From positions 1-33,418 of the forward strand of contig CALSCP010002169.1 in assembly GCA_943704425.1 (NCBI GenBank): a stretch of 33,418 nucleotides of DNA. The letters are read 5' to 3'. Source of the DNA: Ministeria vibrans ATCC 50519. Lineage: Eukaryota; Protista; Filasterea. The position numbers were made by a program, and so were the translations under genes. A model generated the notes under the pieces. The model was not told the origin of the DNA. It ran no database searches and was given only the letters and a program-made list of their open reading frames with translations. Positions 2,827 through 33,418 of this stretch are shown here, piece by piece (positions within the stretch are counted from its first letter, which is position 1; each line of letters begins with the position of its first letter).

Positions 2827-5800
2827 CTACAGATGCATCGAATCGTAACGAAAATCACTCTGATCGAAAGCAATTGCCTCAGGCTCCACCTCGTCAATCC
2901 AGCAGTTGGCATCGGCATAATCAAAACCACCGATGCTGTCGAAGGAGCGTGTGATATTAGACTCACTAACCACAGTGCGTCGTGACACCATGGACGAGTG
3001 TGAGCCGGGCGAGCCGGGCGTGACGAGACGATAGAAGGAGTCTGGGCTGGCCGACGTACTCCCAACGGTGTGTTTTCTCAAAAGACTGCGACTAGGGCGT
3101 CGCGGATGGCTCATCGGCGAGCTCATCGGCGAGTCCAATCGCTCGTCGATGATCACCTGGTCCATCTGCTCACACATGTCAAGCATGGTGATGCCACTCT
3201 CGGGCAAGAAGTACTCGTCGTCCAAAGAATTCTTGGCAGAACGTTTCTGTATGACGCAAAGGGGTGCACACACACATAAAAAAAAAAGAAAAAAAAAGAT
3301 AAGTAAACAATGCATAAATTAGGTAGAAACGTACGGGTTTGTTTTTGGTGCGAATAGCCTTCTCGCGAATAATATCGTTCTTGGCGTCTTTTGACTTGGA
3401 CTTTGAGGATTTGGTTGCAGGAGTGGCAGAGGAGCGGGTGAGGCGGGAGGAGAGAGCAGAGCGCACGCGCTCGGTAGTACAGTAGCCAATGACAAGGACA
3501 ACCGCCTGGGCAATACTTGCGGCGCAGAACATGTAGTCGGCGGCGGGTGAATTCCAAACGGAGGTGAGAAGGCCAAAAATCCACGAGAGACCCAGTGCGC
3601 ACGAGAGGGAGATGAACAGTTTCGCCGAAGTGTGCGACTGTTGGTTTCCTGAGATGCTCTTCTGGATGTGCGAGCGACGGTGACTCAACAGACGGTAGAC
3701 CATGAGGCAGACAATGGTCAGGTTCCAGGCCATGATAAGGGCAAGGGGGGCGATGACCGCCGCATACACACCCGTACTGCTTGACAGGTAGCAAAAGCCA
3801 CTGGCGCTCTTGGTGTACGCCGTGAGGCCATTGACGTCACTGACGATGGACACCACGGCCGTGTAGATGGCCACCACCAGAATGGGTGTAAGCGCAGCAA
3901 AGAGGGTGAGACGACGCGCCAGTTTGCGCAGGTGTGCGTCCATCTTGACAAGCATTGAAAAGACCAGATAGCCATAGCATGCAAGTAGAAGAAACAGAAC
4001 CAGGGTGAAGTAGTGCAACAGAAGACCCGTCACAAAGCATGCCGCATCCCCAAATGATGTCGCAGCCGCAAGGTCCACAACAAAGACCACCTGCTGCAGC
4101 ACCTGGACGCTACAGATGAACATGAGAACGCGGGTGGGAGCAGTGCGGAATGTCTTGGGCAACGTGATGAAGACAATGATGACGGCCAGGGAGCCAACGA
4201 GTGTAGCGAACACGGCAATATACGATGTGACCATTGCGGCAGTAGAACGAGACACGGTTGTCGATGGATCCAGGAGCACGGCAAAGTTGGTCGTGTGCGA
4301 ACAGGCGCACGTCACAGCCACCGCCGAGCGACTCTGCACTGTACATCCTTCGCCACTCCACGACACACTCGCAAAGTCCCAGTACACACACCGCACGCGC
4401 GACACCTCGGCGGCCGTCAGACTGCCACTCAATTCAACCGTGATCTCAAGAGGATCCGCTGCACCCGCAAACGACACACTCTCGTCGGCAAACCCCACCG
4501 ACGTAACCGACGACACAAGCATACCCGTCGTCGCTGTGCCCGCAGCGTCGCTCGACAGCAGCGACGCCTTTGCAATTTTTGCAATGTGCACCTGCGTGCA
4601 CGCCGACAGCGTGCCCAGGTAGGTCGCAAGCGACGACGGAACGCGAATGGACGACCCACTCGCCGAGAGAGTTGCATCGCTCAGCGACGCAGACGGTCCC
4701 CGCCGAGTCGTCGCATTGAACTTGCCACCCTGCGACGACTGAGTTGCGCTCGTCACTGTCGCACACGACTGAGTCGCGTCCAGGATGCTACGCGCAACGC
4801 GTTCGACAACCCGTCCGGGCGCAGTCACATTCTTCGCGGTGGCAACAGTGTGTGCCGCGCCAGCCGCTGGCGCATCCATTGCCTCTTCCACCGTGTTGAA
4901 CATGTTGTTCTGTACAGTCGACGAGGTGCCCGCGAATGCGGTTGCGGCTGTTGCATCGATACTTTCCAGAACGGAGTTGACAATGGACGAGTTGGATGCG
5001 GCAGCCGGCACTGCCATCACTGTGGCCAACGACTCGCTGGCACTCTCAACAGCAGGCTGGGATGCGGACGCAATTTGTGCATTGCTCGTGGAAAGAATGC
5101 TCTCAATGGTCACGCAAGTGTAGCCATCCACACCATTAACACACGCGAGTGCCTCGCCACAAGGACTGGACGCACACTCGTCAATGTCCGACTCACACAG
5201 TGTCGATGTGTAACCAGACACGCACGCGCACAAAAAGCCGTTGACTCCGTCAATGCAACTGGCGCCATTCTGGCACGGAGCAGATGCACACTCGTCAATG
5301 TCGTTGTCGCACAGCGTGCCGTCAAAACCGCCCGCACAGGTGCAAGTGAATCCGTCAACTCCATCAACACAAGTGGCGCTGTTCTGACAAGGGACAGAAG
5401 CACACTCGTCAATGTTGTTCTGGCATTTGTCTCCGCTGTAGCCAGCGGCACACGAGCATGTGTAGCCGTTGACATCATCGATGCAGGAGGCACCATTCTC
5501 GCATGGGCTTGACGCACATTCGTCGATATCATTGTCACACATAGTGCCGTCGTAGCCAGAGACGCACGCACACGTGAAGCCGTTGACTGCGTCGGTGCAA
5601 GTTGCGCCGTTCTCGCATGGATTGGACGCACACTCGTTGATGTTGGTCTGGCACTCAACGCCATTGTAGCCAAGAGCACATGTGCAGGTGTAGCCGTCGA
5701 CTCCGTCGGTGCACGAGGCGCCATTCTGACAGGGAGCAGACGCGCACTCGTCGATGTTGTTGTTACACAGCGTGCCATCGTATCCGGCTGTACAGGCGCA

Positions 5801-7068
5801 AAGGAAGCCGTCGACAGCGTCCACACAGGTGGCGCTGTTCTGGCATGGGCTCGAAGCGCACTCATCTACGTCATTCTGGCAGAAATTGCCTGAATATCCG
5901 GGTGAACAGGCGCAAGTGAAATAGCGGAAGAATACGTCATCAAAGACCATGTTGGGTCCAAAATGACCGAGACCGCCGACAAAGTCTTCGTTGTTGGAGG
6001 GGTACTCGAACACGCCCGACTCATTGGATTGGCGGTGCTCGATGTATCTCAGCGCCGGGTGGATGTAGGCATTGGTGACACCGAAAATGTGGTAATCTTC
6101 GGTGGAGATGGAATGTTGCGCGAGTGCGTACGAGCCAGGCGGGAGCACAAGGGGCTCGATGCTTCGGTAGCGGAAGGTGTTCAGTGCAAACGACTGGCTC
6201 GTGTCGGCGACGATGGTGACGTTGCGAAGGAGCGTTTGGTCGCTGTTGCGCCAAAGACCGACCGTGTGAGAGATGTTGAATCCGTTGGCGCCCAAATCGA
6301 GCGCACCCAGCCATCGCACGGTGAGCGACTCGCTGGTGGTAAACGAGTAGCCAAAGGTCACATTGGTCGAGACAAGGCCGCTGTAGGTGCCGCCGGGGAT
6401 CTTGAAGGCGGGACTGTACGCTGAGGAAAAAAAAAGGGAACACGAGTGAGAAAATGTTGTCTTCTGACGTGGCTTTCGCATTCGGTTTCCGAATTTGTCT
6501 TAAAAGACTCCTTTGAAGGCAAAGCGACACCAGGCGCACGGAATGGGGCATAATAAGGGATGGGTTCACATATGCGGGGTTGCACGATGCGTTTCATGCG
6601 GCCGTTTGTCAGTTTAGTTTGGCTAACGAAAGGGTGCGATTGACGTCATAGAATGAAGGTGTTCCCGAAAAAACGAGCACGAGACGCAGCCAGCGAGAAG
6701 GAGACTAGGATAGGGGTTGCATCGTAGGGGAAGGTGCAGGGGTGGCGAGGGCAGCGGTGGGGTGTGTGGCCTGTGGGTGGAGAAACAAAGTCAACAGATT
6801 CTTCAGGTCAGTACGTACAGGAGCAAGTCGAGTTGTTCGTGCACGGCGACGTCAGACACGACGGATCAAGCTGTGTCTCGCATGAATCGCCTGAGTAGCC
6901 CGCTGCGCACTGGCAGAAGGCGTATTCGCCTGGTGCCGAGTGCAACGCATTCGTCGTGACGGAAATGCACGTCGCACCGTTGAGGCACGTGATATCGTTG
7001 CACGTTGTCCCTGCAACTTGTTGTGTACCAACTGCCAACAGTACACCGAGTGCCAAAAGGGCGAGCAT
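2827..7068 (-). CDS. Adhesion GPCR (about 1,251 aa): signal peptide, 8 complete plus 1 truncated EGF repeats (EGF2 split by a DUF4082-like insert), GAIN/GPS, 7TM, Ser-rich tail
   Basis: Exons 7068-6819, 6420-3335 and 3246-2827 (phase 1, then phase 0). Signal peptide MLALLALGVLLAVG. GPS motif CVYWDFASVSWSGEGC...CACSHTTNFAVLL. Seven hydrophobic segments with family-B-like motifs (C..TGLLLHYFTL, FCYLS, LGLSWIFG). The track's start at 7086 is TTG; the first ATG is at 7068. Confidence 0.92.
4271..4395 (-). other. GPS autoproteolysis motif and Stachel-like peptide (CSHT/TNFAVLL)
   Basis: C-x2-W...W...GC...C-x-C-x-H-x-T-x-F-A-V-L pattern immediately before TM1. Confidence 0.88.
5915..6420 (-). other. 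DUF4082-like insert (type A) between Cys3 and Cys4 of EGF2 of the adhesion GPCR
   Basis: SCLTSPCTNNSTC-[170 aa: FGYSF...WLGALDLGANGFNISHTVGLW...FRYRSIEPLVLPPGSY...EYP...GHFGPN]-CACSPGYSGNFC. Family assignment is from motif recall. Confidence 0.75.
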
Positions 7069-8329: not shown

Positions 8330-8468
8330 TTTTTATTTTTCTGTTGTTTCATTCGTTGTTTTCAATGTACTTCAACTTATCAATTAAGTTCAATTTTCTC
8401 TCTATCCATCACCTTTGTTTCTCCCTCCTCTATCTCTCTCTTTCACACACACTTGGCTTTCTCAATCA

Positions 8469-11400
8469 TCACAAAAATTCATCATTCGTAAAGTCGAATT
8501 TGAAGGACGGCTCGTCGTCGTCAACCTCGTCATCACGTGGCGCGAGCGGATCCGGATCAGAGTCGACGGCACTGCTGCCCACCGGGAGCATCCCGTCACC
8601 CGCACTCTGTTGAAAGTTGTCGTCGGTCGGTGGTTTCTTCAGGATTGATTTGGACGGTTCGCGGTTGAGCGTCACCGGCACACTTGGCTTGTCGCGAGTC
8701 TCGTCAATGAGCTGCGCGCGCGTTCTCAGCTGCAGCGTGCCCCGTCGTATCACCGAGGGACTTTTGCCGCGCGGCGAGCCATGCATTGTCATCTTACTGA
8801 TCGTCGTGGTTGCTGCTGCGGGAGGTGGAGGCACCGTGCGCACGTTCACAGGTGACATGGCCTTGGGCTCGGGCATTGTGGTGGGCATGTCGTACAAGTC
8901 CATTGGCGGCGAGTTTTTCGACGCGGGCGCGACTGCTGTGGACATGGCAGCACCACCACTTTTGCCCTTACGCCCGTGTCCCCACGAGCCCGTGTTGTGG
9001 CTCACCGACTCGTACATACCTTCACCTTCCTCGCGCGAACCCACATTGGCACTGGTCGCGGGCACCTCTTGCTCCACCGACGCGTGCATCGTGTACGGGT
9101 CCTGCGTCTCATACAAATTTCGTGAAGGCTCCACTGCCGGCGGCGTCAACGTGTGGCTGTCACGCGCCCGTGTATCCTCTTCACGACGACGCTCCTGCTC
9201 CACACGTTCAGTTCTTTCACGCTCCGCTCGCTTGCGTTCCGCCAGCTCCCGCTCTGCGCGTTCCCGTTCAGCTCGCTCCCGTTCTCTTTCAGTTAGCTCA
9301 CGCTCAGCGCGTTCCTGCTCCGCTCGCTCCCGTTCTCTTTCAGTTCGCTCACGCTCAGCGCGTTCCTGCTCTGCTCGCTCACGCTCCACTTCGCGCTGCT
9401 TACTCTCCTGTTGATCCAACTCAAGTTGCTTCAGTCGTGTCTCCTCCCATGACGATCCCATTGACTGCTCAATCGAGGGCGGTCGTTGGCGCGACGACTC
9501 TGGCGCATACCCAAACAGCCCACCGCTGCCCGTCGCTGCTGCACCTCCGCTGCTGTAGCGGTCCTCGGGCCGTCCCACCATAGCCATCTCCGCTCCGCTG
9601 TGATGGTTTCCGCTTTGACCACTATACCCCATCTCCGCTCCCGACAGCGAAAACAACTCGGCAATCTTCTCTGAGACGCGCTCGCGCTCTCGCATCACCT
9701 CCATGTACTCACGCGAGCCGGGAGTCAGCTGGAACAAACGTCGGTCCAGCGCAGTCTTGTCGTCGCGCAGTTGTCGCACCCGTCGGCGGAACTCCATCTC
9801 TTCGCGCGACGCACCGCCACTCGCCGCCGACATGGGTCGGTCCGTCGACTCGCTCGTCGTCGCCTGACCAATCGTAAATGCCAGCTGCGTCGCCGGAGCA
9901 CCCGCATCGGCTGCACGCGTCAACGCCGACGTCGTCTGCGGGCGTCCCAGTCCCACGTGCATCTCTGTGCGCGGCAGTGCCTCCATCTGCATCTCGAGCG
10001 TGTCCAAATGACGGATCTTGCCGCGTCGGTCGCGTCGACGTCGTGACACCACAAAAAGCACCAGAATCAGTAATATACACACAATGCACACGGCAAGGAC
10101 AATCCACAGCACGGAGGGAGTCCCAGACGAGCCATTCTGCCCCCCGAGCGTCGGGTTGTTGGGATCCTCAATGATCGCATACATCCCAAAGGTGGTCGTC
10201 GACGTGGCGCGACGACGACCCACCGCATTGGGATCGAAGCACGCCGTCGCATTGCCTGCGCTGCCCACGTCCACCGTCACCCCCCCCAGAATCTGCCAGT
10301 TGTCCGACGTGTCGTCCGTTGCGCGTGCCAGCACCAGATTGAGCCCTGTCAGCGACGACGGCACACAAAAGGTGAGGCACACTTCGCCGTCAATAGGCTG
10401 CCCAAAAGGCACAAAGCCCACGACAGTGCCGGTGCCGGCGGTCGTTGCAAGCGCCGACAGACTCGGCTGGCCCGACAACGGCAGCTCAATCACTCCAATA
10501 GTTGATGTGCTCGCAATCGAACCCGACACCAGACGCACTCCGTTACACCCGTCGGTCGCATCAAGATACAGAGCACCCGCTGCGCCACCCGCCACCGTCA
10601 ACTCCTTCCCAACGGCACACACACCGTCGTCTCGCGTGCCGCCACCCTCACAGCCCCGATAGCGGATACGTCCCGCCAAACACAACGCACACGACGCACA
10701 CACCGACGCACCCGTCACTGGGCCGTACGTGCCCGCGTCACACTGCGTGCAGGTTGCGCCGCCCGACGGGCCCTTGTAGCCCACATTGCACAGGGCACAC
10801 GTTGCACCCGCATAGCCCGCCGCGCACACACAACTAAACGAATCGAGTTCGTTGGTGCAGCCGCCACCATTCGCGCACGGCGACGACACACACTCGTTCA
10901 CCTCGCTGGCACACTCGACACCCGTAAATCCCGACGCACACGTGCACGTGTAGCCGGCAACCCCGTCCACACATGTGGCGCCATTCGAACACGGACTCGA
11001 CGCACACTCGTCCGTGTTGGTCGCGCACGTCGCATCCTCATAGCCCGCGACACAGGCACACGTGTACGTCGCAACACCGTCCACACAAGTCGCACCATTT
11101 TGACATGCATGGCCGGGGCACTCGTCGCTGTTCGTCGCACAGTCGCCTCCTTCAAAGCCATCTGCACACGTACACGTAAAACCGTCTACCGTGTCCGTAC
11201 ACGTCGCGCCATTCGAACACGGACTCGACGCACACTCGTCCATCTCAGAGGCACACAGTGCGCCGGTAAAGCCCGATGCACACACACACGAAAAGCCATT
11301 CACAGCGTCCGTGCAAGTCGCGCCATTTGCACACGGACTCGACGCACATTCGTCCGTGTCCGTGCCACAGTCACTGCCTTCAAACCCCGACGCACACGCG

Positions 11401-14400
11401 CACGAGTAGCCATTCACGGCGTCCGTACACGTCGCGCCATTTGTACACGGACTCGAGGCACACTCGTCAATGTTCTCGGCACACGTCGCTCCCGAGTAGC
11501 CCGCGGCGCACACACACGCGGCACTCGTCGTAAAAACACAAGTTGCCCCATTCGAACACTGGCTCGGGTTCGACACGCACGTGTCCACCAGCGTACACGT
11601 TTCACCACCAAAGCCAACGGTGCACGCACACGTAAAGCCCGCCGCACCACCCGTCTGCTCGGAACACACACCGTTGTTGGCGCACGGCGACGACGCGCAC
11701 TCATCGACGTTCGCCTCGCACTGCGTTCCCGTGCGCCCTGATACACACGCGCACGAAAAGCCGCCGACATTGTTGGAGCAGGTGCCGCCATTGGCACACG
11801 GTGTTGAGGCACACTCGTCAACGTCCGAGTCGCACAGCGTGCCCGCAAAGCCCACGGCACAGTCGCAGCTGAAACCATCGGTGGCATCAGTACACGTCGC
11901 ACCGTTGGAGCAGGGACTCGACACACACTCATCCTCATTCGACTCGCATACGACCCCCGTAAATCCGCTTGCGCACGTGCACACAAACTCGTCAACACTG
12001 GTTCCCTCAGCACACGAGCCACCATTCAAGCAGGGACTCGAGTCGCACTCGGCAACTTCCGCCGTGCACGTTGCACCGGTATAGCCGGCAGCACACACAC
12101 ACGAGAAGCCATCGACTGCGTCGCTGCAAGTGGCGCCATTCAGACAAGGCGACGACACGCACTCGTCCACATTAGCAGCGCACGTTTCCCCGCTGAACCC
12201 CGACGCACACACACACGTGAACGACGCCGTCCCAAAACCATGGCTGCAAGTTGCCCCGTTGCCACACGGCGACGACGTACACTCATCAAAGTCCTGGGTG
12301 CAGTCTGTACCGGCGAATCCAGCGGGACACACACAGACAAAGGCGTTCGCAGTGGGCGTCGTGCATGTTGATGCAGTCGAGCACGGACTCGACGCGCACT
12401 CGTCAATGTCGGACTCACAACGTGGCCCAGTAAAACCCGACGCACACACACAACTAAATAGATTGACCGTCGCTGCCTCGTTGACGCACGTCGCACCATT
12501 GCCACACGGGCTCGACGTGCACTCGTCAAAGTCCTGCGCGCATGTCTCGCCAGAGTAGCCGGTGGCACACGTGCATACAAACTGACCCAGTGCGCCTTCG
12601 GCACACGTACCTGCATTCTCACACGGCATCGACGCACACTCGTCCATGTCCGACGCACACAGATCGCCCGTGTTGCCCGCCACGCAGGCACAGGTAAAGC
12701 CATCTACTCCATCCTCACAAGTGGCGCCATTCAAACAGGGCGTCGACACACACTCGTCAATATTCTCCTCACACGTGTCACCCGAAAACCCCGAGGCACA
12801 CGCACACGCAAACGCAAACGGCTGTGCCGCCTGCGTCGTGCAACTCGCCCCATTGTCACACGGACTCGACGCGCACTCATCGACGTCCGACTCGCATGTG
12901 ACACCAGTGTAGCCAGCGGAACACGTACAGGCGAAGCCATCAATGAGCGACTCGACACACGAACCGCCATTGGCACACGGCTGCGAAGTACACTCGTCAA
13001 TGTCCGTCTGACACTTGGATCCCGTGTAGCCCGCAGCACACACACAGTTGACCACGGGCGGTGCACCCTCCACGCATGACGCCCCATTCAGACACGGATT
13101 CGAGCTACACTCGTCAAAGTCCGACTCGCAAAAGTGACCCGTGTAGCCCGGCTTGCATAGACACAAGTGTGATCCGGGCTGCGCCGTATTCTCCAGACAA
13201 AACCCACCATTGGAACAGGGCGACGACGCACACTCAATCGTCTCCGACTCACACACAGGACCCGTAAAGCCCACTGGACAATCACATGTGTAGCCGCCGC
13301 TGACACCATTGAAACACACGGCACCCGGTGAAACACACGGCGAAGAAGCACACTGCAAGTAAAATTTTAATGCAATAATAACTCGAAAAAAGAAAAAGAA
13401 AATTAAAACACACACACACACACATACACACACAACAATTCACGTACCTCGTCAATGTCAGTTTCACACGAATCCCCGGTATATCCAATAACGCAGGTAC
13501 ACACAAAAAAGCCAATGGATCCCTCGGAGCACGTCGCACCATTGTCACAGGGAAACGACGCACACTCGTCCACATCCGACTCGCAGTGGTCGCCCGTGTA
13601 GCCCGACACGCACAAACACACAAAGAGATTCGATGACGTGCCTTGAGTGCACGTCGCGCCGTTGGAGCAGGGGCTGGACGCACACTCGTCAATGTCTGTC
13701 TGACAGTCGACACCAAAGAACCCATCGGCACAGTCACAGGTGTAAACATCAATTGCGTCCGTGCACGTTGCACCATTGGCACACGGCGCCGACGCACACT
13801 CGTCAATGTCCGACGCGCAATCATCACCGGTGTAACCGGCCACACACGCACACGTATAGCCATTAACCGCGTCCGTGCAGGTGCCACCGTTGGCGCACGG
13901 AAGCGAAGCGCATTCGTCAATGTTCGACTCGCACACAACACCCCCATAGCCGGCGACACAGTCGCACGCGTAGCTTGCCGCGCCGTCGACACATGTCGCA
14001 CCGTTGAGACAAGGTTGCGAGAGACACTCGTCCTCGTTCGATTCACACTCGCTGCCAGTGAACCCCGTGGGACACAGACAAGTGTGTATGGCGGGCACAC
14101 CTGGCCCATGTCCAATGCGCAAGACGGGACGATGGTTGACATTGGTCTGGGGCAACGCCGACATGCTACACACTGGACCGCTCGAGGCGTCATCGCTGTA
14201 GCGCACACGCTGGCGTACAAAGCCCAGTGACACGGTGGTGGTCACACGCGAACTGGTGCCGGTTGCAGAGTCCTCGTGGCACGAACCAATCAGCAAATTC
14301 GACGACCCATCCCACCAAAGAGGCTGCGAAAAACCAATAGTTGTCCACCCAAGCTGCGGTGTATACGATCCACGATGCACCTCAATGGCACCCATCTCGT

Positions 14401-14737
14401 CGACAAACCCCTCCGTCAGATTCGCCACTGTCGAACTCTGCCACACACGCAGCTGCAAGTCCTCAATAGTCGAGCCCAACTCGGTCACAAGCATTTGAAT
14501 AGCGCCAATGCGCGCCCCCGCACTCAAACCAATTCCTGCAAGCTCACTGCCCAACACCAGCATCTGGTCGCGATACTTGAGCTCCGCCCGTCGCAACATA
14601 GTAAAGTCCACCGAATTGACGGTCACGCCCGGCGTAAGCTCGGCAAACGACAGCGTCGACACATCCGGCGGAACCACACACGATCCGCCGTTCAAACACG
14701 GTGAGCTGGCGCACTATAAATCAAAATAGTAATGATA

Positions 14738-14775
<38 letters not shown>

Positions 14776-17700
14776 AATACAAACGATTATATTGCGTATT
14801 AATATCATTCATAATAGTTTTTTTTTCAAATTACCTCATCGATATCTGTCTCACATTCGGTGCCTCCAAATCCATCGGCACACTGACACGAGTAAGATGC
14901 AACCTGGTCAAAACATGTAGCGCCGTTGGTGCAGGGACTCGAGAGACACTCGTCCACATTGGACTCGCACAGGGCACCAGTGAAGCCCTCGGCACAAGTA
15001 CATGTAAACATGCCCACTTCGTCGACACAGGTCGCACCATTGGTGCACGGCTGACTGGAACACTCGGTAATTTCGTCGGCACACGTCACGCCGGTGAAGC
15101 CTTCGGCACAGGTGCACACAAATGAGACAATCCCGTCGGTACACGAGGCACCATTGGCACAGGCGTCAACACAATCGTCGACGTTGGTCTCGCAGTTTAC
15201 GCCGGAGAAGCCCACGCGACACAGGCATTGGTACACATCGGCGCTAGACGGTGGTTCAAAACATGTGCCTTGGTTGAAACACGGTGACGAGGCGCACTCG
15301 GCAATATTCGATTCACAATTGACACCGGTAAAACCTGCTATGCAGGTGCAGTCGTAGCCCATGCCGCCGGCCCCGGAGCCTTGCAGGACACACGTTGCGC
15401 CGTTGGCGCAGGGTGTCGAGTCGCACTCGTCGAGAGACGTCTCACACAGAGTGCCCGTGCGCAAGTCAGCACATGTACAGGTAAACTCTCCCGGGGTCAT
15501 GCTGTTGGTACAGGTGCTGCCGCTCTGGCATGGTTGTGCCGCACACTCGTCAATGTCAAACTGACAGTTGATTCCATTGAAGCCTGTCGCACACACACAT
15601 TCAAAAGAGGCAATGCCGTCAATGCACGACGCACCATTCAGACAGGGCGTGGCGGCACAGTCGTCCACGTTCGTCTCGCAATTGACTCCCGTAAATCCAG
15701 GGGCACAGCGGCACGCAAATGAGTCAATTACCGACTTGCCCAGCTCCACTTGGACGTTGGGACCAAAGCGACCCCACGTCGCGGAAGATGAACTGTACAC
15801 ACAACCAATAGAGCCGGTGGGATCCGGGAACTCAATGGAACTGCCCACATTGGTGTTGCACAGGAGTCGCTGGCTGAAGGCAACTTGGTCGACAAACGAC
15901 GCTTGGTCCGCCTCGAAGACATACAAATCTTGGGTTCCAGTACCCGCATACAGTGCCGCCAGTGCGTACTCGGTCGATGGCGCAAGCGAGACAGGCGAGC
16001 CCAGCGAGAGCCATCGAAACCCATTGGCGCCCACAGGGCTCGCTGTGGTCACAGTGCCCGATGCCATGAGAGAGCCATCGGACAGGCGCCACAGACCAAC
16101 CGAGTGCGAAGCGGCAAGGCCATCTGAATTGAGATCGTAGAATCCAAGCGCGGTCACACTGGTCACGGTGGTCGCATCCGTAGTAAAGGTCCATCCCGCA
16201 ATGGCATTGCCTCCCGCGCCCGTATTGACACCGCTCGACGGATTGAAGGTGAATGTCTCGAGCAACGCTGTGGGTGGGAAAAGACCATCGGAGCACACGG
16301 CACCATTGGTGCAGGGTGAACTCGTACACTCGTCAATGTCCGACTCACACTGAACTCCCGTGTAACCCGCATCACAGGTACACTCGAAAAAGTTCGATTG
16401 TGACCCCTGACTACATGTCGCGCCATTGGCACACGGGTTCGACGCGCACTCGTCCACGTCCGCACTACAGTCTTCATCTGTGAACCCCGCCGGGCACGCA
16501 CACTCCCACAAATCAGGCGCACTTCCCTGCGAGCAAACTCCTCCATTGGTGCAGGGTGATGAGACGCACTAAAATGATTAAAATAATATAAAAATTAATA
16601 ATAATAATAATTATTATTATTATTATAATAATAATATTATTATTATTAATTTTTTATTATTATTATTATTATTTTAAATAATAATAATAATTATTATTAT
16701 TATTATTATATTTTCGTGATTATTATTATTTTTTTTTGCTTTGTTACCTCATCAATGTCAGTAGCACAACTATCGCCTGTAAAACCAGCAGGACAATCAC
16801 ACACCCACAGATCCATGGAGTTCCCTTGCGAGCAGGTTCCACCGTTGGTGCAGGGACTCGACATACACTCGTCCAAGTCCGACTCGCACGCGTCGCCTGT
16901 GGTCCCCGCAGCACACACACAGGACCATTTTGAGTTGAAGACGGCAACATTGACAAACGAAATGACGCACGAGGCACCATTGGCACACGGATTTGACTCG
17001 CACGCATCAAAATTCTCACAGTGCGTGCCGGTGAACTCGTTCAAACAGCTGCACTCGTAACTATCCACACCATCACTGCACGTTCCGCCATTCTCACACG
17101 GCAACGAAGCGCACTCGTCAATCTCCGTCTCGCAGTCCACACCGGTGTAACCGCTCTGGCAAATACACTCATACAAATCGGGCAAATTGCCCTGGGTGCA
17201 TGTAGCGCCGTTGCGACAGGGAGTCGAGTCGCACTCGACAATGTCCATCTCACATGCGACGCCAGTAAATCCAGGAGGGCAAGAACAATCCCACAAATCA
17301 GCCTGACTACCCTCAAAACAGACGCCGCCATTGGTGCATGGCGACGACGCACACTCGTCAATATCCGACTCGCATTGCTCGCCGGTAAACCCATCAACAC
17401 AGTCACACTCAAAAAAGTTTGGCGTGTTTCCCTGTGCGCACGTTCCGCCATTGCTGCAAGGTGACGACACACACTCGTCCACGTCTGTGCCACACGCTGC
17501 ATCAGTAAACCCCGCAGCGCACATGCAACTGTAATCATTGGCGCCGTCCACACACGTTCCGCCGTTGGTGCACGGCGACGAAGCACACTCGTCGTCGTTT
17601 GCTTCGCATTGTATACCACTAAATCCATCTGCACACGTACATCCAAAACCATCAACTTGGTCGGCACACGTAGCACCATTGGAGCATGGCAAGGACTCAC

Positions 17701-18526: not shown

Positions 18527-18599
<73 letters not shown>

Positions 18600-21500
18600 T
18601 TTCTCTTTCTTTTCTTATTTTTTTGCATTAGCATACCTCGTTAATGTCAACCTCACACCCAATTCCGGTGTAGCCTGCGGGACAAATGCAATAGAACAGA
18701 CCAAATTCCTCCGTACCAAACGCATACTTAAAGTTGGGGCCAAAATATCCTGCGTCATTGGTCGTCATGAGCGTGTAGGTGCACGCGAGAGAACCGTCAT
18801 GGGGATCGGGGAAGACCAAGTTGGAGGAAGGCACATTGACGGAGGTGCACTCGACCTTGTTCACAAAGCTAATATCATCCGTCGCCGCCTGCACCGAGCT
18901 AGTGGTCGCCACGGCACGATCCGCAAGGCCTCCGGAGGAAAACAGCGCAGCAATCACATAGGTGGTACCCACCTCGAGGGTAACGTTGGCAGTCAATTCA
19001 CTGTAGCGAAAATGGTCCTCAAGAGCGTGGGCTGTACCACCAGATACTGTTACCGACACCACCAGGGTGCCCGAGTCGGTCCACACGCCAATTTCATGCG
19101 AGGCAGCAAGACCGTCGTCAAGATGATCAAACAGACCCAAATCAGTGAGACGCACGCCCACCGAGCTTGGTGTAAACGTCCATCCAAGCAGACGATTCTC
19201 GGGGGTGTTGGCGGGTGCCTCACTAAAGACAAATGACTCGACGGCAAGGAAGGGGCCACGTTGACCCGAGTCGCATGTGCCTCCATTTGCACAGGGACTG
19301 CTGTAGCAACCAGTGATGAGCGACTGGCACAAGGTGCCCGTGTATTCAATGCCACAGTCGCACGTGAATCCATCCACTGCGTCCTGGCAGGCGCCACCAT
19401 TCTGGCAGGGCGACGACGCGCATTCGTTCTGGTCGTTATCACACCGTAATCCAACAAACCCATCGACACAGGCGCACTCAAAGTAGTTGGGCTGCGACCC
19501 TTGCGAACAGGTGGCGCCGTTCTCACATGGAGAACTCGCACACTCGTCAATATCTACCTCACATTGTGTCCCAGTAAATCCACTCGCACACGTACACGCG
19601 TACACATTAGCATTTGGTTCGGTACACAATGCACCATTGCTACACGGTGACGAAGCGCACTAAGACACAGAATAAGAATAATTAATAAAAAAAAACGCAT
19701 TGAGAACATTTGGCGCAAACAAAGTAAAATTTGTTTTGCTTTTTTGTTTTGGGAAATTTTTTGTGCGTACTTCGTCAATGTCAACTTCACAGTGAGTAGA
19801 GGTAAAGCCAGGGAGACAGGTGCACGAATAGCCATCAATGGCCTCGAGACACACACCGCCATTGGCACAGGGACTGGAGGCGCACTCGTTTACTTCGGTG
19901 GAACAAATTGTGTCGGTGTAGCCCGAGGGGCACGCGCAGGTAAACCCATCGACTGCGTCGGTGCATGTGCCACCGTTGACACACGGTAGGGACACACACT
20001 CGTTGTCGTCGTCGGTGCACAAGGTGTTGCTAAAGCCCGATGCGCAGGTGCACGTGAAGCTGTCCACACCGTCAACGCATGTGGCACCGTTGACACAAGG
20101 ACTGGAGTCACACTCGTCGAGTTCCGACTCGCACAACGTATTGGTGTATCCCGACTCACATGTACATTGAAATCCATCAATGTCATCGACACAGGTAGCC
20201 CCGTTGGCGCATGGTGACGAAGCGCACTCGTCGATGTTGGTCTCGCAGATGGAGCCAGTGAATCCGTCGAGGCACACGCATGCATAGAGACCAAAACCGT
20301 GCACACACACACCATTATTAACGCACGGCGACGAGGCACACTCATCAATGTCCGACTCGCACAAAGTCCCGCTGAATCCAAGCGCGCACACACACGAAAA
20401 TTCATCGGGGGACGCGCCAGACTGAGAGCAAGTCGCACCATTGACACAAGGGCTGCTTGAGCACTCGTCAATGTCCGACTCACACAGCGTCCCAACAAAG
20501 CCCAAAGAACAATCGCAGGTGTAGCCAGCAATTTGGTCGTTACAGGTACCACCATTGCTACAGGGCAACGATGCACACTCGTCAATGTCCGACTGGCACT
20601 GAATGCCAGCGTAGCCAGCTGCACACTGACACACAAATCCGTTGACCTGGTCGACACAGGTGGCGCCGTTCATGCATGGTGTCGAATTGCACTCGGCCGT
20701 ATTGGTAGCGCACACACTCCCGGCAAAACCATCCACACATGTGCAGGTGAATTCATTGTCGCTGTCGACGCATGTGCCGCCATTCTGGCAGGGGTTGCTC
20801 GAACACTCGTCAATGTTTGTTTCGCACGCTACGCCCGTGAACCCGGCGTGACAGATGCAAGTGTGCAACCCAACGCCGTCCACACATGTGGCACTGTTGG
20901 CACACGGTGCTGAGAGACAATCGTTAATGTTTGTCTCGCAGGTGACGCCGGTAAAGCCTGACGGACAATCGCACTCAAAAGCGTCGGGCATATTGGCTGT
21001 CACGCCAAACTGCACAACAGGTCGCAAATTGGGGCCGGACGCGCCAAATGCAACCATATTACATGCGGTAGGAGAGACATCGTCACTATTTTTGAGGGCC
21101 TGAGCTCGAAACGCAACATTGACATCGACAGTGATGGGCGAATCGACGCCTGTAGTGGCAGACTCGTGACACAGTGACACGAGCAGATTGGAGGTACCGT
21201 CCCACACAATGAGCGTGCTGAAATCAAGCTGTGTCCAGCCTAGCTGGGGCGTCACCGTGCCCGTGTATACCTGGGTGGCCGTCGTGTCGTCTACAAAGCC
21301 AGCGCTAAGCTCGGCAATGGTCGTGGCGAGGATGCCCATGTTAAAGTTGGGCACAGTTGAGCCGACACCCGTCACAAAAAAAGAGAGCGAGCCAAGACGG
21401 TCGCCACTTGCAAGGCCAAAGGCAGTGAGTTCGCTGGCGAGCACAAGCAACTGACTGCGGTGCTTTAGAAGCGACCTCTTGAAAGGCGAAAAGTCCGCAA

Positions 21501-24127
21501 TGGACACTTGGAAGGCACCCGTGACCACAGTAATATTGCCTGCGTCGCGCACCGATTGCGCACAGGTACCACCATTGGAGCACGGACTGCTTCCACACTC
21601 ATCAATGTCCACCGAGCACAAGGTACCGGTGAAACCGGGCGCACACTGACACGCGAAGGAGCCAACGGTATTCTCGACACAGGTGGCGCCTGTGGACGCT
21701 GCACACGGCTGTGAGGCGCACTCGTCAATGTCCGACTCGCATTGTGCGCCAGTGTAGCCCGAGGGACATGAGCAAAGGAAAGATTCGTCGACATTAGAGC
21801 ATGTGGCGGTGTTCACGCACGGCGACGAATGACATGCGTCGTGAAGCGTCTCGCAGCTCACACCCGTGTAGCCGGCGGCACAGGTGCACACAAATGTACC
21901 GGCTGAGTCGACGCACGAGCCCCCATTGGCACACGGGTTGGAGAGGCATTCGTTGGTGATTGTTTCGCACGCGCTGCCCGTCGTGCCGGCAACACAGGCA
22001 CACGAGTAAGCGTTGACACCGTCGAGACAAGTGGCGCCGTTCACGCACGGGGTTGAGGTGCAGTCATCGAGATTGCTCTCGCAATCGGACCCGGTAAAGC
22101 CCGTGAGACACGTGCAAGTGTACGCGTCGGGAGCGGCAACGGAGGAGCCAAGACGGAGCACGGGACGAATCTTGGGGTCGCTTGCTGCAAAGGCAGACAT
22201 GGTGCACGCGTCGAGTTGAGCGTCGTCGGAAAAGCGCAAAGCCTGCGCGGTGTACCCGACGTTGATGTCGATGGTCACGGCCGTGTCGGCGCTGGACGAG
22301 GCGGACGAATGGCACATGCTAATGACAATGTTGGAAGCGCCATCCCAGACAAACGACGAGGAAAAGTCAAAGTCGAACCAGCCGAGCGTGGGTACAAAAG
22401 GTCCCTGATACACCGGCTGTGCACTTCCTTCGTTGACAAAGCCCGCGTCGAGGGTGCTCAGGGACGTAGCAAGCAACGTGATGGTGAAGGTGTCGATGGA
22501 TGCACCCACCTGTGTCACGTCGAACGAGAGGGTGCTCAGGGCGTCGTTGGGCTGCACATTGAGCGCGAGCAGCTCGCTTGCAAGCACCAGAATTTGCTGA
22601 CGGTTCTTGAGCGACGAGCGTTTAAACGGCGAAAAGTCTGTGTTGGATATCTGGAAGGTGCCCGTCTTGACTTCGTATTGAACAGATGCAGTAAGGGGCA
22701 CCGAGCACGGCGCGCCATTGAGACAGGGACTCGACGCACACTCGTCAATGTCCGACTCACATTGCAGGCCAGTGTAGCCCGCGACACACGTACACGTGAA
22801 CTTGTCAATACCATTGAGACAAGTGCCTGCGTTGCGACAGGGTTGCGACGCACACTGGTCGACTTGGGATTCGCAGCGGTCACCAACAAAGTCGGGTGGG
22901 CACAGACAGGAGAAGGTGGTGACGGTGCCGACGCAGGTAGCGCCGTTGAGGCACGGCTGCGACACACACGCGTTAAGAGCGGTCTCGCAGTACTCGCCGG
23001 TAAACTCGGAAGAGCAAGTGCACACAAAGGAATTGGATGTGGGTGTCGAGCAAGTTCCATTGTTGGTGCAGGGCGACGATGCACACTCATCGACATCCGT
23101 CTCGCACAACACACCGGTGTAGCCAGCGTTGCAAAGACACGCATAGAGATTGTTGATCTTGCTAATAAAACCCAACTGAACGACAGGACGCAGGTTGGTG
23201 GCGCTAGGTGAAAGTGCCGGCAGGGAACAGGCGGCGTCACCGAGCTGGTCGCTGAGACCGACGGCATGAGCGCGAAACGCAATGGGCACGTCGATGGAGA
23301 CTGCCGTGTCGGTACCCATAGCGGGGTCTTCATGGCACGTACTAATAAGAATGTTGGAGGTGCCGTCCCAGGTGAATGTGGTGCCGAAGAGAATTTTGCT
23401 ATAGCCGGCAGTGAGGGTGGGTGTGTAGGCAGCCGGGCCGTATACCTCGAGGGCGGCCGAGTCGTCGATGAAGCCGCCAGAGAGGTCGCTTGTCGTGGTG
23501 TGCATGATGCGCACAGACAAAGAGGCAAGCGAGCTGCCAATGGAGCCGTCGATGGCATAGCCGATCGAGTTGAAATCCGTCAGGGCACCCACACCTTTGG
23601 TCGTGAGTTCGCTGGCTCGAATGAGAATCTGATCACGAACGCGCAACGACGATCGTTTGAAGGGCGAGAAGTCTGTCGAGGCGGTGACGGCCGAGCCAAT
23701 CGTGACAAGCCCCTGCCCAATCGAAAGGAACGAGCAGGTGGCGCCGTTGACGCAGGGCGACGAGAGACATTCATCGACGTCCTCAAGGCATTGTGCGCCT
23801 GTGCGCCCTGCGATGCACTGACAGGTGTACGAGGCGCCGCCGTCCACGCACGTCCCTCCCACTGCGCATGGCGAGCTATCGCAGGCTGAACAAACGCGTG
23901 AGGCGCAATGTAAGTGAATTGGAGCAAAAATAAAGGCGAGAGAGGGAGAACGGAGAACAAGAAAAAAAAAGTGCTTTTTTTGGAAATCTCTCCTCAAACT
24001 GACCGACAGTCAAGTTTGTACGATTGCAGCGAGACGTACCTTGAGCATCTGCGGCGCCGGGCCCCAGCGCAACGACCCCCACAAGCACAGCAAGCAGGAT
24101 CCCTCGGCAAAACAGGCCGTTTCGCAT
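8469..24127 (-). CDS. Giant type-I membrane protein (about 4,889 aa): signal peptide, about 76 Notch-type EGF repeats (six split by large inserts), Cys-rich TNFR/GCC-like unit, ZU5-like domain, one TM, about 525-aa cytoplasmic tail
   Basis: Exons 24127-24040, 23885-19771, 19659-18637, 18376-17771, 17701-16748, 16568-14835, 14713-13448 and 13352-8469 sum to 14,670 nt, with GT-AG introns and frame kept. Signal peptide [28 protein letters not shown]. Repeats follow [36 protein letters not shown] (hand count 76). [24 protein letters not shown] (about 10047-10112) is followed by SRRRRDRR. Confidence 0.9.
9271..9372. repeat. 51-bp tandem duplication within the E/R-rich helical segment of the giant receptor's tail
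   Basis: GCTCGCTCCCGTTCTCTTTCAGTT(A/C)GCTCACGCTCAGCGCGTTCCTGCTC occurs at 9271 and 9322. Confidence 0.85.
10165..10620 (-). other. Juxtamembrane ZU5-like domain
   Basis: GGAAGAL...VRLVSGSI...[19 protein letters not shown]...LVL...W..L...TTFGMYAI resembles the ZU5 pattern (GG.l...l.ip.gal...vv...P.g..f...v.l...W...hFs.fa). Recognised by pattern only. Confidence 0.55.
14081..14677 (-). other. Type-B (WDGxSN) insert no. 4, between EGF Cys3 and Cys4 (199 aa)
   Basis: [21 protein letters not shown]...[24 protein letters not shown]...C...RPVLRIG. Confidence 0.85.
14738..14774. repeat. Poly(A) run (poly-T on the transcribed strand) in intron 6 of the giant gene
   Basis: Directly visible. Confidence 0.9.
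15714..16292 (-). other. Type-A (DUF4082-like) insert between EGF Cys3 and Cys4 (193 aa)
   Basis: AGWTF...[23 protein letters not shown]...FRW..L..PVSL...Y...FP...GRFGPN. Confidence 0.8.
16575..16730. repeat. (AAT)n/(ATT)n low-complexity tract filling intron 5 of the giant gene
   Basis: Directly visible; the tract is almost pure A/T. Confidence 0.9.
18527..18597. repeat. (ATT)n microsatellite in intron 3 of the giant gene
   Basis: Directly visible. Confidence 0.95.
18691..19272 (-). other. Type-A (DUF4082-like) insert between EGF Cys3 and Cys4 (194 aa)
   Basis: LGWTF...[29 protein letters not shown]...FRY..L...VTL..G..YVI...FP...GYFGPNF. Confidence 0.82.
20974..21561 (-). other. Type-B (WDGxSN) insert no. 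3 (196 aa)
   Basis: [23 protein letters not shown]...GWTQLDF...[14 protein letters not shown]...C...RPVVQFG. Confidence 0.85.
22117..22704 (-). other. Type-B (WDGxSN) insert no. 2 (196 aa)
   Basis: [23 protein letters not shown]...GWFDFDF...[15 protein letters not shown]...C...RPVLRLG. Confidence 0.85.
23140..23733 (-). other. Type-B (WDGxSN) insert no. 1 (198 aa)
   Basis: [23 protein letters not shown]...GY..I.F...[16 protein letters not shown]...C...RPVVQLG. Confidence 0.85.
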
Positions 24128-24662: not shown

Positions 24663-26719
<2,057 letters not shown>

Positions 26720-27528: not shown

Positions 27529-27574
<46 letters not shown>

Positions 27575-30276: not shown

Positions 30277-30318
30277 CGTCTTACTTTTTATACACCATTG
30301 TACATTTTTGCTGTCCTG

Positions 30319-30337
30319 TTACTTTTTCTAAATATAC

Positions 30338-30374
<37 letters not shown>

Positions 30375-31948: not shown

Positions 31949-33418
31949 ATGTGCACCCTTGCGTGGATTCTCGTAGCGGTACTTGCGCTCTCAAGCCCCA
32001 GCGCCGGCGCTGCTTGCGCTTGTGGCAACGGAGGAACGAGCATTGCCGAACCGGATTCCAATGAGTGCATGTGCCACTGCGCTGCCGGATTCACAGGAGA
32101 CACCTGTGCACAGACCATTTCCGAGTCGTGCAGCTCCAATCCTTGCATGAACAATGCTCCATGTAAGACAGACCAAAAGAAGTCAAAAAAAATTTTTCTC
32201 TCGAGTTTGTCTTCGCGGTCTCTTTCTCGCTTGCTTTGTGGCCTACTGGGCCATTGTTCGACCCGAAACACCTGTTTCGCGCAAAAGGGGTCGAGTACTA
32301 TCCAACCTCCACTTTATCGCGAGCGGAACTTCCACCAATATCATTGTTTGCTGCCGTCACCTCTGCTTGCTTGCGCAGGGCGCCAATGCGTGTGGCGGCG
32401 GTGCTTTCCCCCCCGGCGCACTTTGTGCAGTGTCTGCCATCCGTATGGGCGCTCACACGGGGCCACCTTCGGCTCACGCACAGCGATAATTGTTTTATTG
32501 ACGTCACCAAGGCGTATCTTATTCTCACCTCGCGTCTATTCATTCCTCAGGCTCTGGACTCGGCATTGGCGATTTCACGGGTGGCACCAACTCAACAAAC
32601 TTTGCGAAGCACACCGTTGGACTTCGCTTCAAGACGACGGAATCAATTGTTGTCACTCATTTGGGCAGTCATGACTTCCTCGGCTCGGGTCTCCTCACGG
32701 ACCGAACGGTCGGTCTGTGGGACTCGGGCGGTAACCTTCTTGCCAGCACAGTTCTCGAGGCTGGGGCAGGCGCTCCGCTGCGGGGCGGCTACCGTCTCAA
32801 GAAACTCGCGAACAGCATTACCCTCAAGGCGAATAAGGAGTTCTCCATTGGTCAGCGTAGCGCCACCACCTACCAGTACAAGTGGCAGCTCGAGCGACTC
32901 ATAACACACCCTTCCGTCCTGTGGGTGGGAGCCCGTGTTAGCACTCAGACCACCTTCGCCAACCCGACAGACGACAGCTACAACTATTTTGGCCGTCTCA
33001 CCGCCACGTTTGTCGTCGCCGGCGACACCTATGGCACCTACGTGTGCGACTGTCCGTCGGGGTACACGGGCAGCCAGTGCGACGTCAACATTAACCCGTG
33101 CGGCTCGAGCCCATGTGAGAATGGTGCCTCCTGCATCGATGATGTCAACGGCTACACATGCTCGTGTGCCGCTGGCTACAGCGGAGACAAATGCCAAAAC
33201 GACATTGACGAGTGTGCTTCTGTTCCCTGTCAGAACAGCGCCACTTGTGTTGATGGAGTTGACGGATTCACTTGCTCCTGTACAGCCGGATACGATGGCA
33301 CGCTGTGTAACAACAACATCGACGAGTGCGCGTCTGCTCCCTGTCAGAATGGCGCCTCGTGCACCGACGGAGTCGACGGCTACACCTGCACATGTGCTCT
33401 TGGCTACAATGGCGTTGA
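31949..33418 (+). CDS. EGF-repeat surface protein, paralog of the left adhesion GPCR (5' part; runs off the right edge; second exon absent from the ORF track)
   Basis: Exon 31949-32162 holds the signal peptide, EGF1 and half of EGF2. A phase-1 intron spans 32163-32550. The open exon from 32551 reads C-[164-aa DUF4082-like insert: TVGLRF...VTHLGSHDFLGSGLLTDRTVGLWDSGGNLLAS...GYR..L...ITL...FANP...FG]-CDCPSGYTGSQC, followed by three more EGF repeats. Confidence 0.85.

What the first reader, a model, noticed from the sequence alone, without database searches (positions are those of the whole stretch)
2827..33418. Candidate new system: EGF-scaffold receptors displaying bacterial-like domains inserted at one fixed site (Cys3-Cys4)
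Seen in sequence: three genes contain eight EGF repeats whose roughly 8-aa Cys3-Cys4 loop is replaced by 164-199 aa, while all six EGF cysteines stay intact on either side. The inserts lie at 5915-6420, 14081-14677, 15714-16292, 18691-19272, 20974-21561, 22117-22704, 23140-23733 and 32553-33044. Two apparently unrelated insert families (four copies each) use the same site, in two receptor classes (7TM adhesion GPCR and single-pass). Established: laminin L4 domains are inserted between Cys3 and Cys4 of laminin-type LE modules, so the topology is viable. I do not know of it in Notch-type calcium-binding EGF arrays. Inference: the EGF rod acts as a stalk presenting interchangeable binding heads, for example for prey, glycan or surface recognition.
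Basis: partly seen in the sequence, partly recalled or inferred. Interest (0 to 1): 0.9.

Follow-up and report, generated by a model that had tools for sequence, protein, structure and literature searches.

The report
Beta-sandwich domains nested inside EGF modules
Three surface-receptor genes of an unidentified marine protist carry eight ordinary EGF modules that each hold a whole bacterial-type beta-sandwich domain in one loop; this copies the laminin design with different parts and recurs across the genome.

Summary
All eight inserts are in frame at the stated coordinates, between Cys3 and Cys4 of otherwise canonical six-cysteine Notch-type EGF modules.

- **Loop lengths.** Among 84 EGFs in the window the loop is 7-16 aa in 78 and 193-199 aa in six. 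Two more inserts are separated from their N-half by an intron.
- **Transcripts.** Spliced transcript contigs carry three of the inserts (14081-14677, 15714-16292, 18691-19272) while neighbouring GT-AG introns are removed, so these inserts are exonic.
- **Family A** is Pfam DUF4082.
- **Family B** has no Pfam or NCBIfam model. Its relatives are tandem modules of Bacteroidota T9SS surface proteins, and those are never EGF-flanked.
- **A versus B.** They show no sequence relation, but their AlphaFold models hit the same top ten PDB chains (PHR domains, CBM and lectin-like modules, phage receptor-binding proteins; Z 9-11).
- **Whole genome.** At least 32 A and 20 B copies exist. All 50 that I examined have EGF halves around them.
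- **Further families.** Two more families (C, D) use the same site, and one environmental protein from another organism also carries nested D.

The closest known design is laminin/perlecan L4 inside LE modules. A binding-head function is inferred, not shown.

The scan had already found this architecture on other contigs of this genome (s1-761900, s1-768286).

The parts
6967..7068 (-). Adhesion-GPCR gene, first exon: start codon at 7068, signal peptide, then the C1-C3 half of the split EGF (C-x4-C-x5-C), ending at 6967. The donor site was not resolved.
   Evidence: sequence only, no RNA laid here
5915..6420 (-). Insert A1 (family A, DUF4082-like). It begins right after an AG acceptor and is followed by the C4-x-C5-x8-C6 half.
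   Evidence: It scores E 5.8e-26 against a profile of 25 other genomic copies. It has no direct Pfam hit.
3182..5914 (-). Rest of the adhesion GPCR: C-half of the split EGF, six EGFs, a Ser/Ala-rich stalk, the GPS motif and seven transmembrane helices.
   Evidence: EGF E 2.8e-40, GPS E 2.1e-11, 7tm_2 E 2.4e-10
8472..24127 (-). Giant single-pass receptor gene. Signal-peptide exon 24041-24127, then at least seven exons with 76 EGFs, one transmembrane segment and a cytoplasmic tail in exon 8472-13439.
   Evidence: Three of its introns are confirmed by spliced contigs.
23140..23733 (-). Insert B1 (family B), nested between Cys3 and Cys4.
22117..22704 (-). Insert B2 (family B). It is the first sequence of the modelled alignment A3.
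20974..21561 (-). Insert B3 (family B).
18691..19272 (-). Insert A3 (DUF4082). Its host EGF ends at an intron.
   Evidence: PF13313, E 4.3e-7, 30.4 bits against a cut-off of 28.4. It is covered by overlapping transcript contigs 18640-18946 and 18935-19349.
15714..16292 (-). Insert A2 (DUF4082). It is the first sequence of the modelled alignment A4.
   Evidence: PF13313, E 4.2e-9, 36.9 bits. It lies inside spliced contig piece 14835-16568 with no gaps. Model.
14081..14677 (-). Insert B4 (family B). Its host EGF starts right after an intron.
   Evidence: It lies inside spliced contig piece 13448-14713 with no gaps.
14714..14834 (-). Intron (121 nt, GT..AG) after D-I-D-E, before Cys1 of the host EGF of B4.
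16569..16747 (-). Intron (179 nt, GT..AG) at the same EGF position.
17702..17770 (-). Intron (69 nt, GT..AG) at the same EGF position.
31949..32164 (+). Third gene, first exon: signal peptide, one small EGF-like unit, then the C1-C3 half (32129-32164). The donor site was not resolved.
   Evidence: sequence only
32553..33044 (+). Insert A4 (DUF4082). It starts right after an AG acceptor.
   Evidence: PF13313, E 1.1e-7, 32.4 bits; E 1.5e-18 against the independent profile
33045..33418 (+). C-half of the split EGF and further EGFs of the third gene, cut by the contig end. About 90% identical in DNA to EGFs of the adhesion GPCR (5236-5881).

Best explanation
These are nested-domain EGF modules. 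A complete beta-sandwich of about 165-200 aa is inserted at the tip of the main EGF hairpin, between Cys3 and Cys4, in otherwise canonical Notch/coagulation-type EGF modules. These modules sit in the ectodomains of an adhesion GPCR, a 76-EGF single-pass receptor and a third gene that is cut by the contig end.

**Shown**
- The inserts are exonic and transcribed (three of eight tested).
- All six host cysteines are invariant, and the aromatic two residues before Cys4 is kept.
- Family A is DUF4082.
- Family B belongs to a very large unnamed family. Its other members seen here are tandem modules of Bacteroidota T9SS surface proteins, without EGF flanks.
- Both families are predicted with high confidence as the same PHR/CBM-like jelly roll.
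- The design is genome-wide and uses at least four insert families.

**Inferred**
- The EGF halves re-join under the sandwich, so the EGF rod stays continuous and the sandwich projects sideways, as laminin L4 does from the LE rod.
- Each family entered an EGF once or a few times, probably from bacteria, and then spread by duplication of the whole split-EGF-plus-insert cassette.
- The heads are ligand-binding modules (glycan, particle or cell surface) that feed adhesion or signalling receptors.
For: **Site and frame**
- Positions and frames.
- Pfam EGF matches profile positions 1-16 in N-halves and 17-31 in C-halves.
- In PDB profile searches the N-half aligns to residues 1-20 and the C-half to residues 20-37 of 40-aa Notch1 EGF peptides.
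- All six host cysteines are invariant in 18 B and 25 A cassettes.
- F or Y stands at C4-2 in 39 of 43 cassettes.

**RNA**
- Contigs of runs X1 and X2 join 13448-14713 | 14835-16568 | 16748-17355 and 17563-17701 | 17771-18374 at GT-AG introns, and run straight through the inserts.
- Run X7 is colinear with the DNA.

**Identity of the inserts**
- DUF4082 scores above Pfam's cut-off for A2, A3 and A4.
- The protein atlas gives a DUF4082 cluster at 0.94.
- The B profile finds 4464 representative proteins. The top 150 contain no EGF pattern. Two of the four top-150 proteins scanned against Pfam carry Ig_7, and one of them also Por_Secre_tail.
- All 41 hits of the B-only search lack EGF domains in their Pfam annotation; most carry Por_Secre_tail and related domains, and the named ones are bacterial.
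- None of the 80 best metagenome loci has EGF halves.

**Fold**
- Model confidence is mean pLDDT 83 (B) and 88 (A), with about 90-97 in most of the sandwich.
- Both models have the same top-ten PDB neighbours at Z 7.3-10.8.

**Census**
-.
- Eukaryotic B copies cluster on a tree (two label changes, 0 of 500 shuffles as low), and one origin is not ruled out.
Against: - No coordinates of the models were available, so disulfide geometry and contact between the EGF halves were not checked. pLDDT of the halves is only 50-66 in the B model and 58-87 in the A model.
- RNA was laid on 6 kb only, so five of the eight inserts rest on open frames and conservation.
- No binding was tested. Fold neighbours at Z 9-11 are only a little above the usual best Z of 7-8, and they include non-binding PHR and capsid proteins.
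- Laminin L4, the closest analogue, has no known ligand (PMC5338690).
- The direction and number of transfers from bacteria are not resolved. The tree is a quick one, rooted at the midpoint, and one copy (L011) sits weakly among bacterial rows.
Confidence: 0.75

Rival explanations
1. The inserts are real and nested but are structural elements (spacers, kinks or glycosylation platforms of the EGF rod), not ligand-binding heads.
For: Laminin L4 and LF have the same kind of fold and position, and no ligand has been found for them (PMC5338690). The fold neighbours here include PHR domains and capsid proteins that are not lectins.
Against: - Both families come from bacterial surface-protein contexts.
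- Motifs such as R-x-Q-x-L and W-D-G-x-S-N are shared between eukaryotic and bacterial B copies, which suggests a conserved site.
- At least four different families at one site fit diversification of specificity better than a spacer role.
Confidence: 0.18
2. The flanking half-motifs are not one co-folded EGF. They are truncated EGF remnants on either side of an ordinary inter-EGF domain.
For: pLDDT of the halves is moderate.
Against: - The halves are exactly complementary: EGF profile positions 1-16 and 17-31, and chain residues 1-20 and 20-37.
- All six cysteines are invariant in 43 cassettes.
- Half an EGF would leave unpaired cysteines, since the pairing is 1-3, 2-4, 5-6.
- DSSP marks short strands at Cys3 and at Cys4 in both models, as in the EGF hairpin.
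Confidence: 0.04
3. The inserts are removed before the mature protein (cryptic introns, intein-like excision) or are assembly or contamination artefacts.
For: Five of the eight inserts were not covered by the single RNA lay.
Against: - Spliced contigs keep three inserts while removing adjacent introns.
- All 50 genomic copies are open and conserved at protein level.
- The stretch is held by runs of three studies.
- The host genes have spliceosomal introns and eukaryotic neighbours, namely a DEAD-box helicase and a GNAT acetyltransferase.
Confidence: 0.03

Closest known systems
Laminin alpha/gamma and perlecan L4 (domain IV, Pfam Laminin_B) inserted in LE modules
   Same: [quoted passage not shown] The disulfide logic around the site is the same (1-3, 2-4).
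   Different: - The host here is the six-cysteine Notch/coagulation-type EGF, not the eight-cysteine LE.
- The inserts are DUF4082 and an unnamed family with bacterial relatives, not Laminin_B. There is no Pfam hit, and no laminin among the 50 best structural neighbours.
- Several families use the site, with dozens of copies per genome.
- The hosts are membrane receptors, including an adhesion GPCR, not basement-membrane proteins.
Pfam DUF4082 (PF13313) in bacterial secreted and surface proteins
   Same: Family A matches the model above its gathering score.
   Different: In this genome the domain is nested inside EGF modules in all 30 copies examined. I did not examine its bacterial contexts. 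Only two papers mention the family, and neither addresses its function.
Unnamed repeat of Bacteroidota T9SS cargo proteins (with Ig_7/CHU_C and Por_Secre_tail)
   Same: Family B aligns over nearly its full length at 27-40% identity and shares motifs.
   Different: The bacterial copies are tandem, free-standing modules without cysteine-rich flanks. The eukaryotic copies are always inside an EGF.
PHR domains (MYCBP2, BTBD2) and CBM/lectin-like jelly rolls, phage receptor-binding proteins
   Same: They are the best structural neighbours of both models: Z 7.9-10.8 for the PHR domains, 131-139 residues aligned.
   Different: There is no sequence match to Pfam PHR. The resemblance is of fold only and does not assign a function.

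Membership tests
Laminin/perlecan L4-in-LE nested module | Globular domain inserted between Cys3 and Cys4 of the EGF-type module | tested here: met
   definition from PMC5338690
Laminin/perlecan L4-in-LE nested module | Host is an eight-cysteine LE module (Pfam Laminin_EGF) | tested here: not met
   The hosts have six cysteines. Pfam gives EGF/hEGF/EGF_CA only. PDB matches are Notch, Delta and factors VII/IX/X, none laminin.
Laminin/perlecan L4-in-LE nested module | Insert is a Laminin_B (L4) domain | tested here: not met
   There is no PF00052 hit at E up to 0.01, and none for the A1 and A4 inserts at E up to 1. No laminin chain is in the top 50 of either structural search.
Pfam DUF4082 (family A) | Score above the gathering cut-off of 28.4 bits | tested here: met
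   A2 36.9 bits, A3 30.4, A4 32.4. A1 has no direct hit but scores E 5.8e-26 against an independent profile of 25 genomic copies.
Calcium-binding EGF (EGF_CA) | Six cysteines and the D-x-[DN]-E-C start | tested here: met
   The cysteines are invariant and the consensus is D-I-D-E-C in alignment A3. The A4 consensus shows only a partial D-x-C before Cys1. Three host EGFs follow D-[IV]-D-E introns.
Calcium-binding EGF (EGF_CA) | C3-x-[DN]-x4-[FY]-x-C4 loop (hydroxylation and calcium site) | tested here: not met
   The loop is replaced by 175-216 aa. Only the aromatic at C4-2 (39 of 43) and D/N at C4-4 (30 of 43) remain. Calcium binding cannot be judged.
Adhesion GPCR (gene at 3182-7068) | GPS motif next to a secretin-type 7TM domain | tested here: met
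   GPS E 2.1e-11 at residues 697-736; 7tm_2 E 2.4e-10 at residues 751-981. The full GAIN fold was not tested.
Notch receptor (gene at 8472-24127) | LNR, NOD/NODP and ankyrin repeats | tested here: not met
   No Pfam family was found in the 743 C-terminal residues. It is an EGF array with one transmembrane segment only.
PHR domain (Pfam PF08005) | Sequence match to the PHR model | tested here: not met
   There is no Pfam hit. Only fold similarity (Z 7.9-10.8) and a weak atlas lead at 0.89 exist.

The most novel reading that the evidence does not exclude
A protist lineage has turned one permissive EGF loop into a general socket. It has repeatedly captured bacterial surface-binding beta-sandwich domains (at least four families, more than 60 copies) and plugged them into the Cys3-Cys4 hairpin of EGF rods. 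This would build a diversified receptor repertoire, including adhesion GPCRs, for recognising bacteria, prey or substrates.
Probability: 0.3. Interest if true: 0.8.

Novelty: new variant of a known kind. Interest (0 to 1): 0.62.

Why it matters
- **A general insertion site.** The Cys3-Cys4 hairpin tip, known as an insertion site only in laminin-type LE modules, also accepts whole domains in ordinary EGFs. One genome has exploited this at scale with several domain families.
- **A first eukaryotic context for two domains.** DUF4082 and a very large unnamed bacterial surface-protein domain now have a eukaryotic receptor context.
- **Testable candidates.** The genes provide ligand-binding heads for an adhesion GPCR in a unicellular relative of animals.
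- **A natural template.** The design shows how to graft binding domains onto EGF rods.
- **A possible transfer case.** If the bacterial origin holds, this is domain-level gene transfer followed by expansion inside a eukaryotic scaffold.

Tried and rejected
- **Homologue search with EGF flanks.** It was swamped by Notch, Crumbs and fibropellin and said nothing about the insert. It did bring in P0151 and P0179 by accident.
- **Homologue search with the DUF4082 insert alone.** No hit at E 0.001. The tool needs shared 5-mers and a fixed length range, so the blank means little.
- **Protein atlas for B.** The best score was 0.79, which is only a lead.
- **NCBIfam.** No model matched A, B, C, D or the bacterial B proteins.
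- **hhalign of A against B.** No relation was found.
- **PDB sequence profiles.** Only the EGF halves matched.
- **Foldseek.** Only weak matches, TM up to 0.47. VIA-align gave the usable ranking.
- **Literature.** No report of nested domains in classical EGFs. The 'split EGF' terms mostly matched EGFP.
- **Joined gene models.** Everything was done exon by exon.
- **Organism.** It was not identified, because run and organism names were coded.
- **Complex prediction.** Not used, since no claim of protein-protein binding is made.
Full report
**1. What the window holds**

The window (33,418 bp, contig C2169 of a 29.7-Mb assembly in 2,860 contigs) is eukaryotic. It has GT-AG introns, a DEAD-box helicase gene and a GNAT acetyltransferase gene, and three EGF-rich genes.

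- **Gene 1** (minus strand, 3182-7068) is an adhesion GPCR. Pfam finds six EGFs, a GPS motif (E 2.1e-11) and a secretin-type 7TM domain (E 2.4e-10).
- **Gene 2** (minus strand, 8472-24127) has a signal-peptide exon, at least seven further exons with 76 EGFs, one hydrophobic transmembrane segment and a long cytoplasmic tail. No Pfam family matches its last 743 residues, so it is not Notch.
- **Gene 3** (plus strand, from 31949) runs off the contig end.

**2. The observation**

Six lie in one exon with both EGF halves. Upstream stands C-x4-C-x5-C, mostly preceded by the D-I-D-E linker of calcium-binding EGFs. Downstream stands C-x-C-x8-C.

The other two (5915-6420 and 32553-33044) begin exactly after an AG acceptor. 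Their C1-C3 half lies in an upstream exon right behind a signal peptide. Those two introns are inferred from sequence only.

A census of the 84 EGFs in the window gives a bimodal Cys3-Cys4 loop. It is 7-16 aa (mode 8) in 78 modules and 193-199 aa in six, with nothing between.

**3. The halves are the two halves of one EGF**

- Pfam's EGF model matches positions 1-16 in N-halves and 17-31 in C-halves.
- Profiles of the cassettes match residues 1-20 and 20-37 of single 40-aa Notch1 EGF peptides in the PDB. They also match factor VII, IX and X EGFs, but no laminin.
- Across 18 B and 25 A cassettes from the whole genome, all six host cysteines are invariant.
- The aromatic two residues before Cys4 is F or Y in 39 of 43 cassettes. 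From established knowledge of cbEGF pairs, this residue packs against the preceding module.

**4. The inserts are in the mRNA**

I could lay reads on one 6-kb stretch (13350-19349). Contigs of runs X1 and X2 are spliced:

- 13448-14713 | 14835-16568 | 16748-17355 in one record;
- 17563-17701 | 17771-18374 in another.

They have no gaps or differences across inserts 14081-14677 and 15714-16292. Overlapping contigs cover 18691-19272.

The removed pieces are canonical GT..AG introns placed after D-[IV]-D-E and before Cys1. Run X7 is colinear with the genome through those introns, so it is DNA.

The other five rest on open frames and protein-level conservation.

**5. What the inserts are**

*Family A* (5915-6418, 15714-16292, 18691-19272 and 32553-33044) is Pfam DUF4082.
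- A2, A3 and A4 score above the gathering score.
- A1 matches an independent profile of 25 other genomic copies at E 5.8e-26.
- The protein atlas agrees, with a DUF4082 cluster at 0.94.

*Family B* (23140-23733, 22117-22704, 20974-21561 and 14081-14677) has no Pfam or NCBIfam model.
- A profile search of 1.84 billion representative proteins finds 4464 relatives.
- The best 150 are long multi-copy proteins with no EGF pattern and about 1.5% cysteine.
- Of four top-150 proteins scanned against Pfam, two carry Ig_7 (CHU_C-associated), and one of them also carries the T9SS sorting domain Por_Secre_tail. That combination is typical of Bacteroidota surface proteins.
- A B-only homologue search gave 41 hits, none with an EGF domain; most carry Por_Secre_tail and related domains, and the named ones are bacterial.
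- None of the 80 best metagenome loci has EGF half-motifs around the domain.

**6. Fold**

AlphaFold2 models of whole cassettes, built on own-genome alignments, reach mean pLDDT 83 (B) and 88 (A). Most of the sandwich scores about 90-97, and the EGF halves 50-87.

An all-against-PDB structural search gives both models the same ten best chains:
- PHR domains of MYCBP2 and BTBD2;
- the lectin-like domain of Cwp84;
- the CBM of an acetyl-xylan esterase;
- a polyvinyl-alcohol esterase;
- tail-tip and baseplate proteins of phages Bxb1 and phi812;
- a cyanophage and a chlorovirus capsid protein.

Z is 7.3-10.8 over 131-161 residues.

Profile-profile comparison of A with B finds nothing (probability 0.3%). 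So the two families are unrelated in sequence but share one jelly-roll fold.

Model coordinates are not returned by the tool. I therefore could not measure disulfide distances or the contact between the halves. DSSP does mark short strands at Cys3 and at Cys4 in both models, as expected for the EGF hairpin.

**7. Size of the phenomenon**

Six-frame searches of the genome find at least 20 B and 32 A copies on about 20 contigs. Of the 50 I examined:
- 44 have both EGF halves in the same open frame, with loops of 175-216 aa (one partial parse gave 142);
- the other six have the downstream half only, like the two intron-split cases in the window.

Two more families turned up by accident.
- **Family C.** Protein P0151 (ENA metagenome scaffold) is 100% identical to contig C894 of this genome. 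That gene carries inserts of 132-136 aa with two cysteines, nested at the same site. Six copies were parsed as nested, and the profile finds seven strong copies there plus weaker ones elsewhere.
- **Family D.** Protein P0179 (JGI metagenome 3300071654) comes from another organism, since its EGFs are at most about 60% identical to anything here. It carries two nested inserts of about 210 aa. Three or four copies at 23-33% identity lie in this genome, and the two I read on contig C320 are also nested.
- Neither C nor D has a Pfam or NCBIfam model.

**8. Origin**

On a quick maximum-likelihood tree of 18 eukaryotic and 70 bacterial B domains, the eukaryotic copies are strongly clustered (two label changes; 0 of 500 shuffles as low). 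The four window copies sit in a nine-member clade with SH-aLRT support of 99. Well-supported branches do not exclude a single origin.

The root and the direction of transfer are not established. Bacterial origin is inferred from the huge bacterial spread against one or two eukaryotes.

**9. Comparison with what is known**

The only described parallel I could find is laminin/perlecan L4. [quoted passage not shown]

Here the site and the kind of fold are the same, but three things differ:
- the host module is a six-cysteine Notch-type EGF;
- the insert families are different;
- the protein class is different (membrane receptors).

DUF4082 occurs in only two papers of the library, neither about its function. 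Four further full-text searches found no report of domains nested in classical EGFs.

**10. Verdict**

The architecture is real, transcribed, non-random and genome-wide. I rate it a new variant of a known kind, namely the laminin L4-in-LE design.

The 'binding head on a stalk' mechanism is plausible from fold and bacterial context, but it is untested. A purely structural role is the main rival.

The scan had already reported the same architecture on other contigs of this genome (s1-761900, followed up; s1-768286). This window adds the following:
- the DUF4082 identity of family A;
- the shared fold of A and B;
- RNA proof for three inserts;
- the genome census;
- families C and D;
- a second organism;
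- the adhesion-GPCR host.

Noticed in passing
L051 (G000:C894:36959-46958), nested inserts at L051:2737-3219, 3694-4170, 4645-5118, 5593-6072, 6550-7026, 8443-8913: A third insert family (C, 132-136 aa, two conserved cysteines, no Pfam or NCBIfam model) is nested at Cys3-Cys4 in a 40-EGF gene of the same genome. The protein is public as an unannotated ENA metagenome prediction (P0151, scaffold SCHR19-1_SAMN09406036_METAG-scaffold_390).
   Followed up: partly
L057 (G000:C320:19800-26600), L057:3457-4143 and 1093-1770 (minus); L059 (JGI 3300071654, Ga0620614_010355) 2487-6773: A fourth family (D, about 205 aa, ending in a [IV]-D-[DN]-hydrophobic strand) is nested in EGFs of this genome. It is also nested in P0179, a protein of a different, environmental organism (inserts 23-33% identical).
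   Followed up: partly
window 33108-33418 (+) versus 5236-5881 (-): EGF-coding DNA of the third gene is about 90% identical to EGFs of the adhesion GPCR 27 kb away, in inverted orientation. Their DUF4082 heads are strongly diverged. This suggests gene conversion or a recent partial duplication limited to the EGF part.
   Followed up: partly
window 13448-13800, 14835-14993 and other pieces (runs X5, X6): Runs labelled as a different organism (B, another study) hold identical pieces that start exactly at exon boundaries. They look like transcripts of this organism in another sample, or a mislabelled or mixed culture.
   Followed up: no
alignment A3 columns for C153 and C189 of the first sequence (inside family B inserts, e.g. 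window 22117-22704): Two cysteines inside the B sandwich are invariant in all 18 eukaryotic copies, and R57 and R202 are invariant too. A probable internal disulfide and a conserved basic site.
   Followed up: no
L057:2143-2364 and L026 (G000:C320): A run of N (assembly gap or withheld stretch) lies inside an EGF of the C320 gene. Copy counts on that contig may be slightly off.
   Followed up: no
window 24797-26305 (+) and 1439-2203 (-): The neighbouring genes are ordinary eukaryotic ones: a DEAD-box helicase (DEAD E 6e-47, Helicase_C E 6.5e-33) and a GNAT acetyltransferase (E 1.3e-8).
   Followed up: yes
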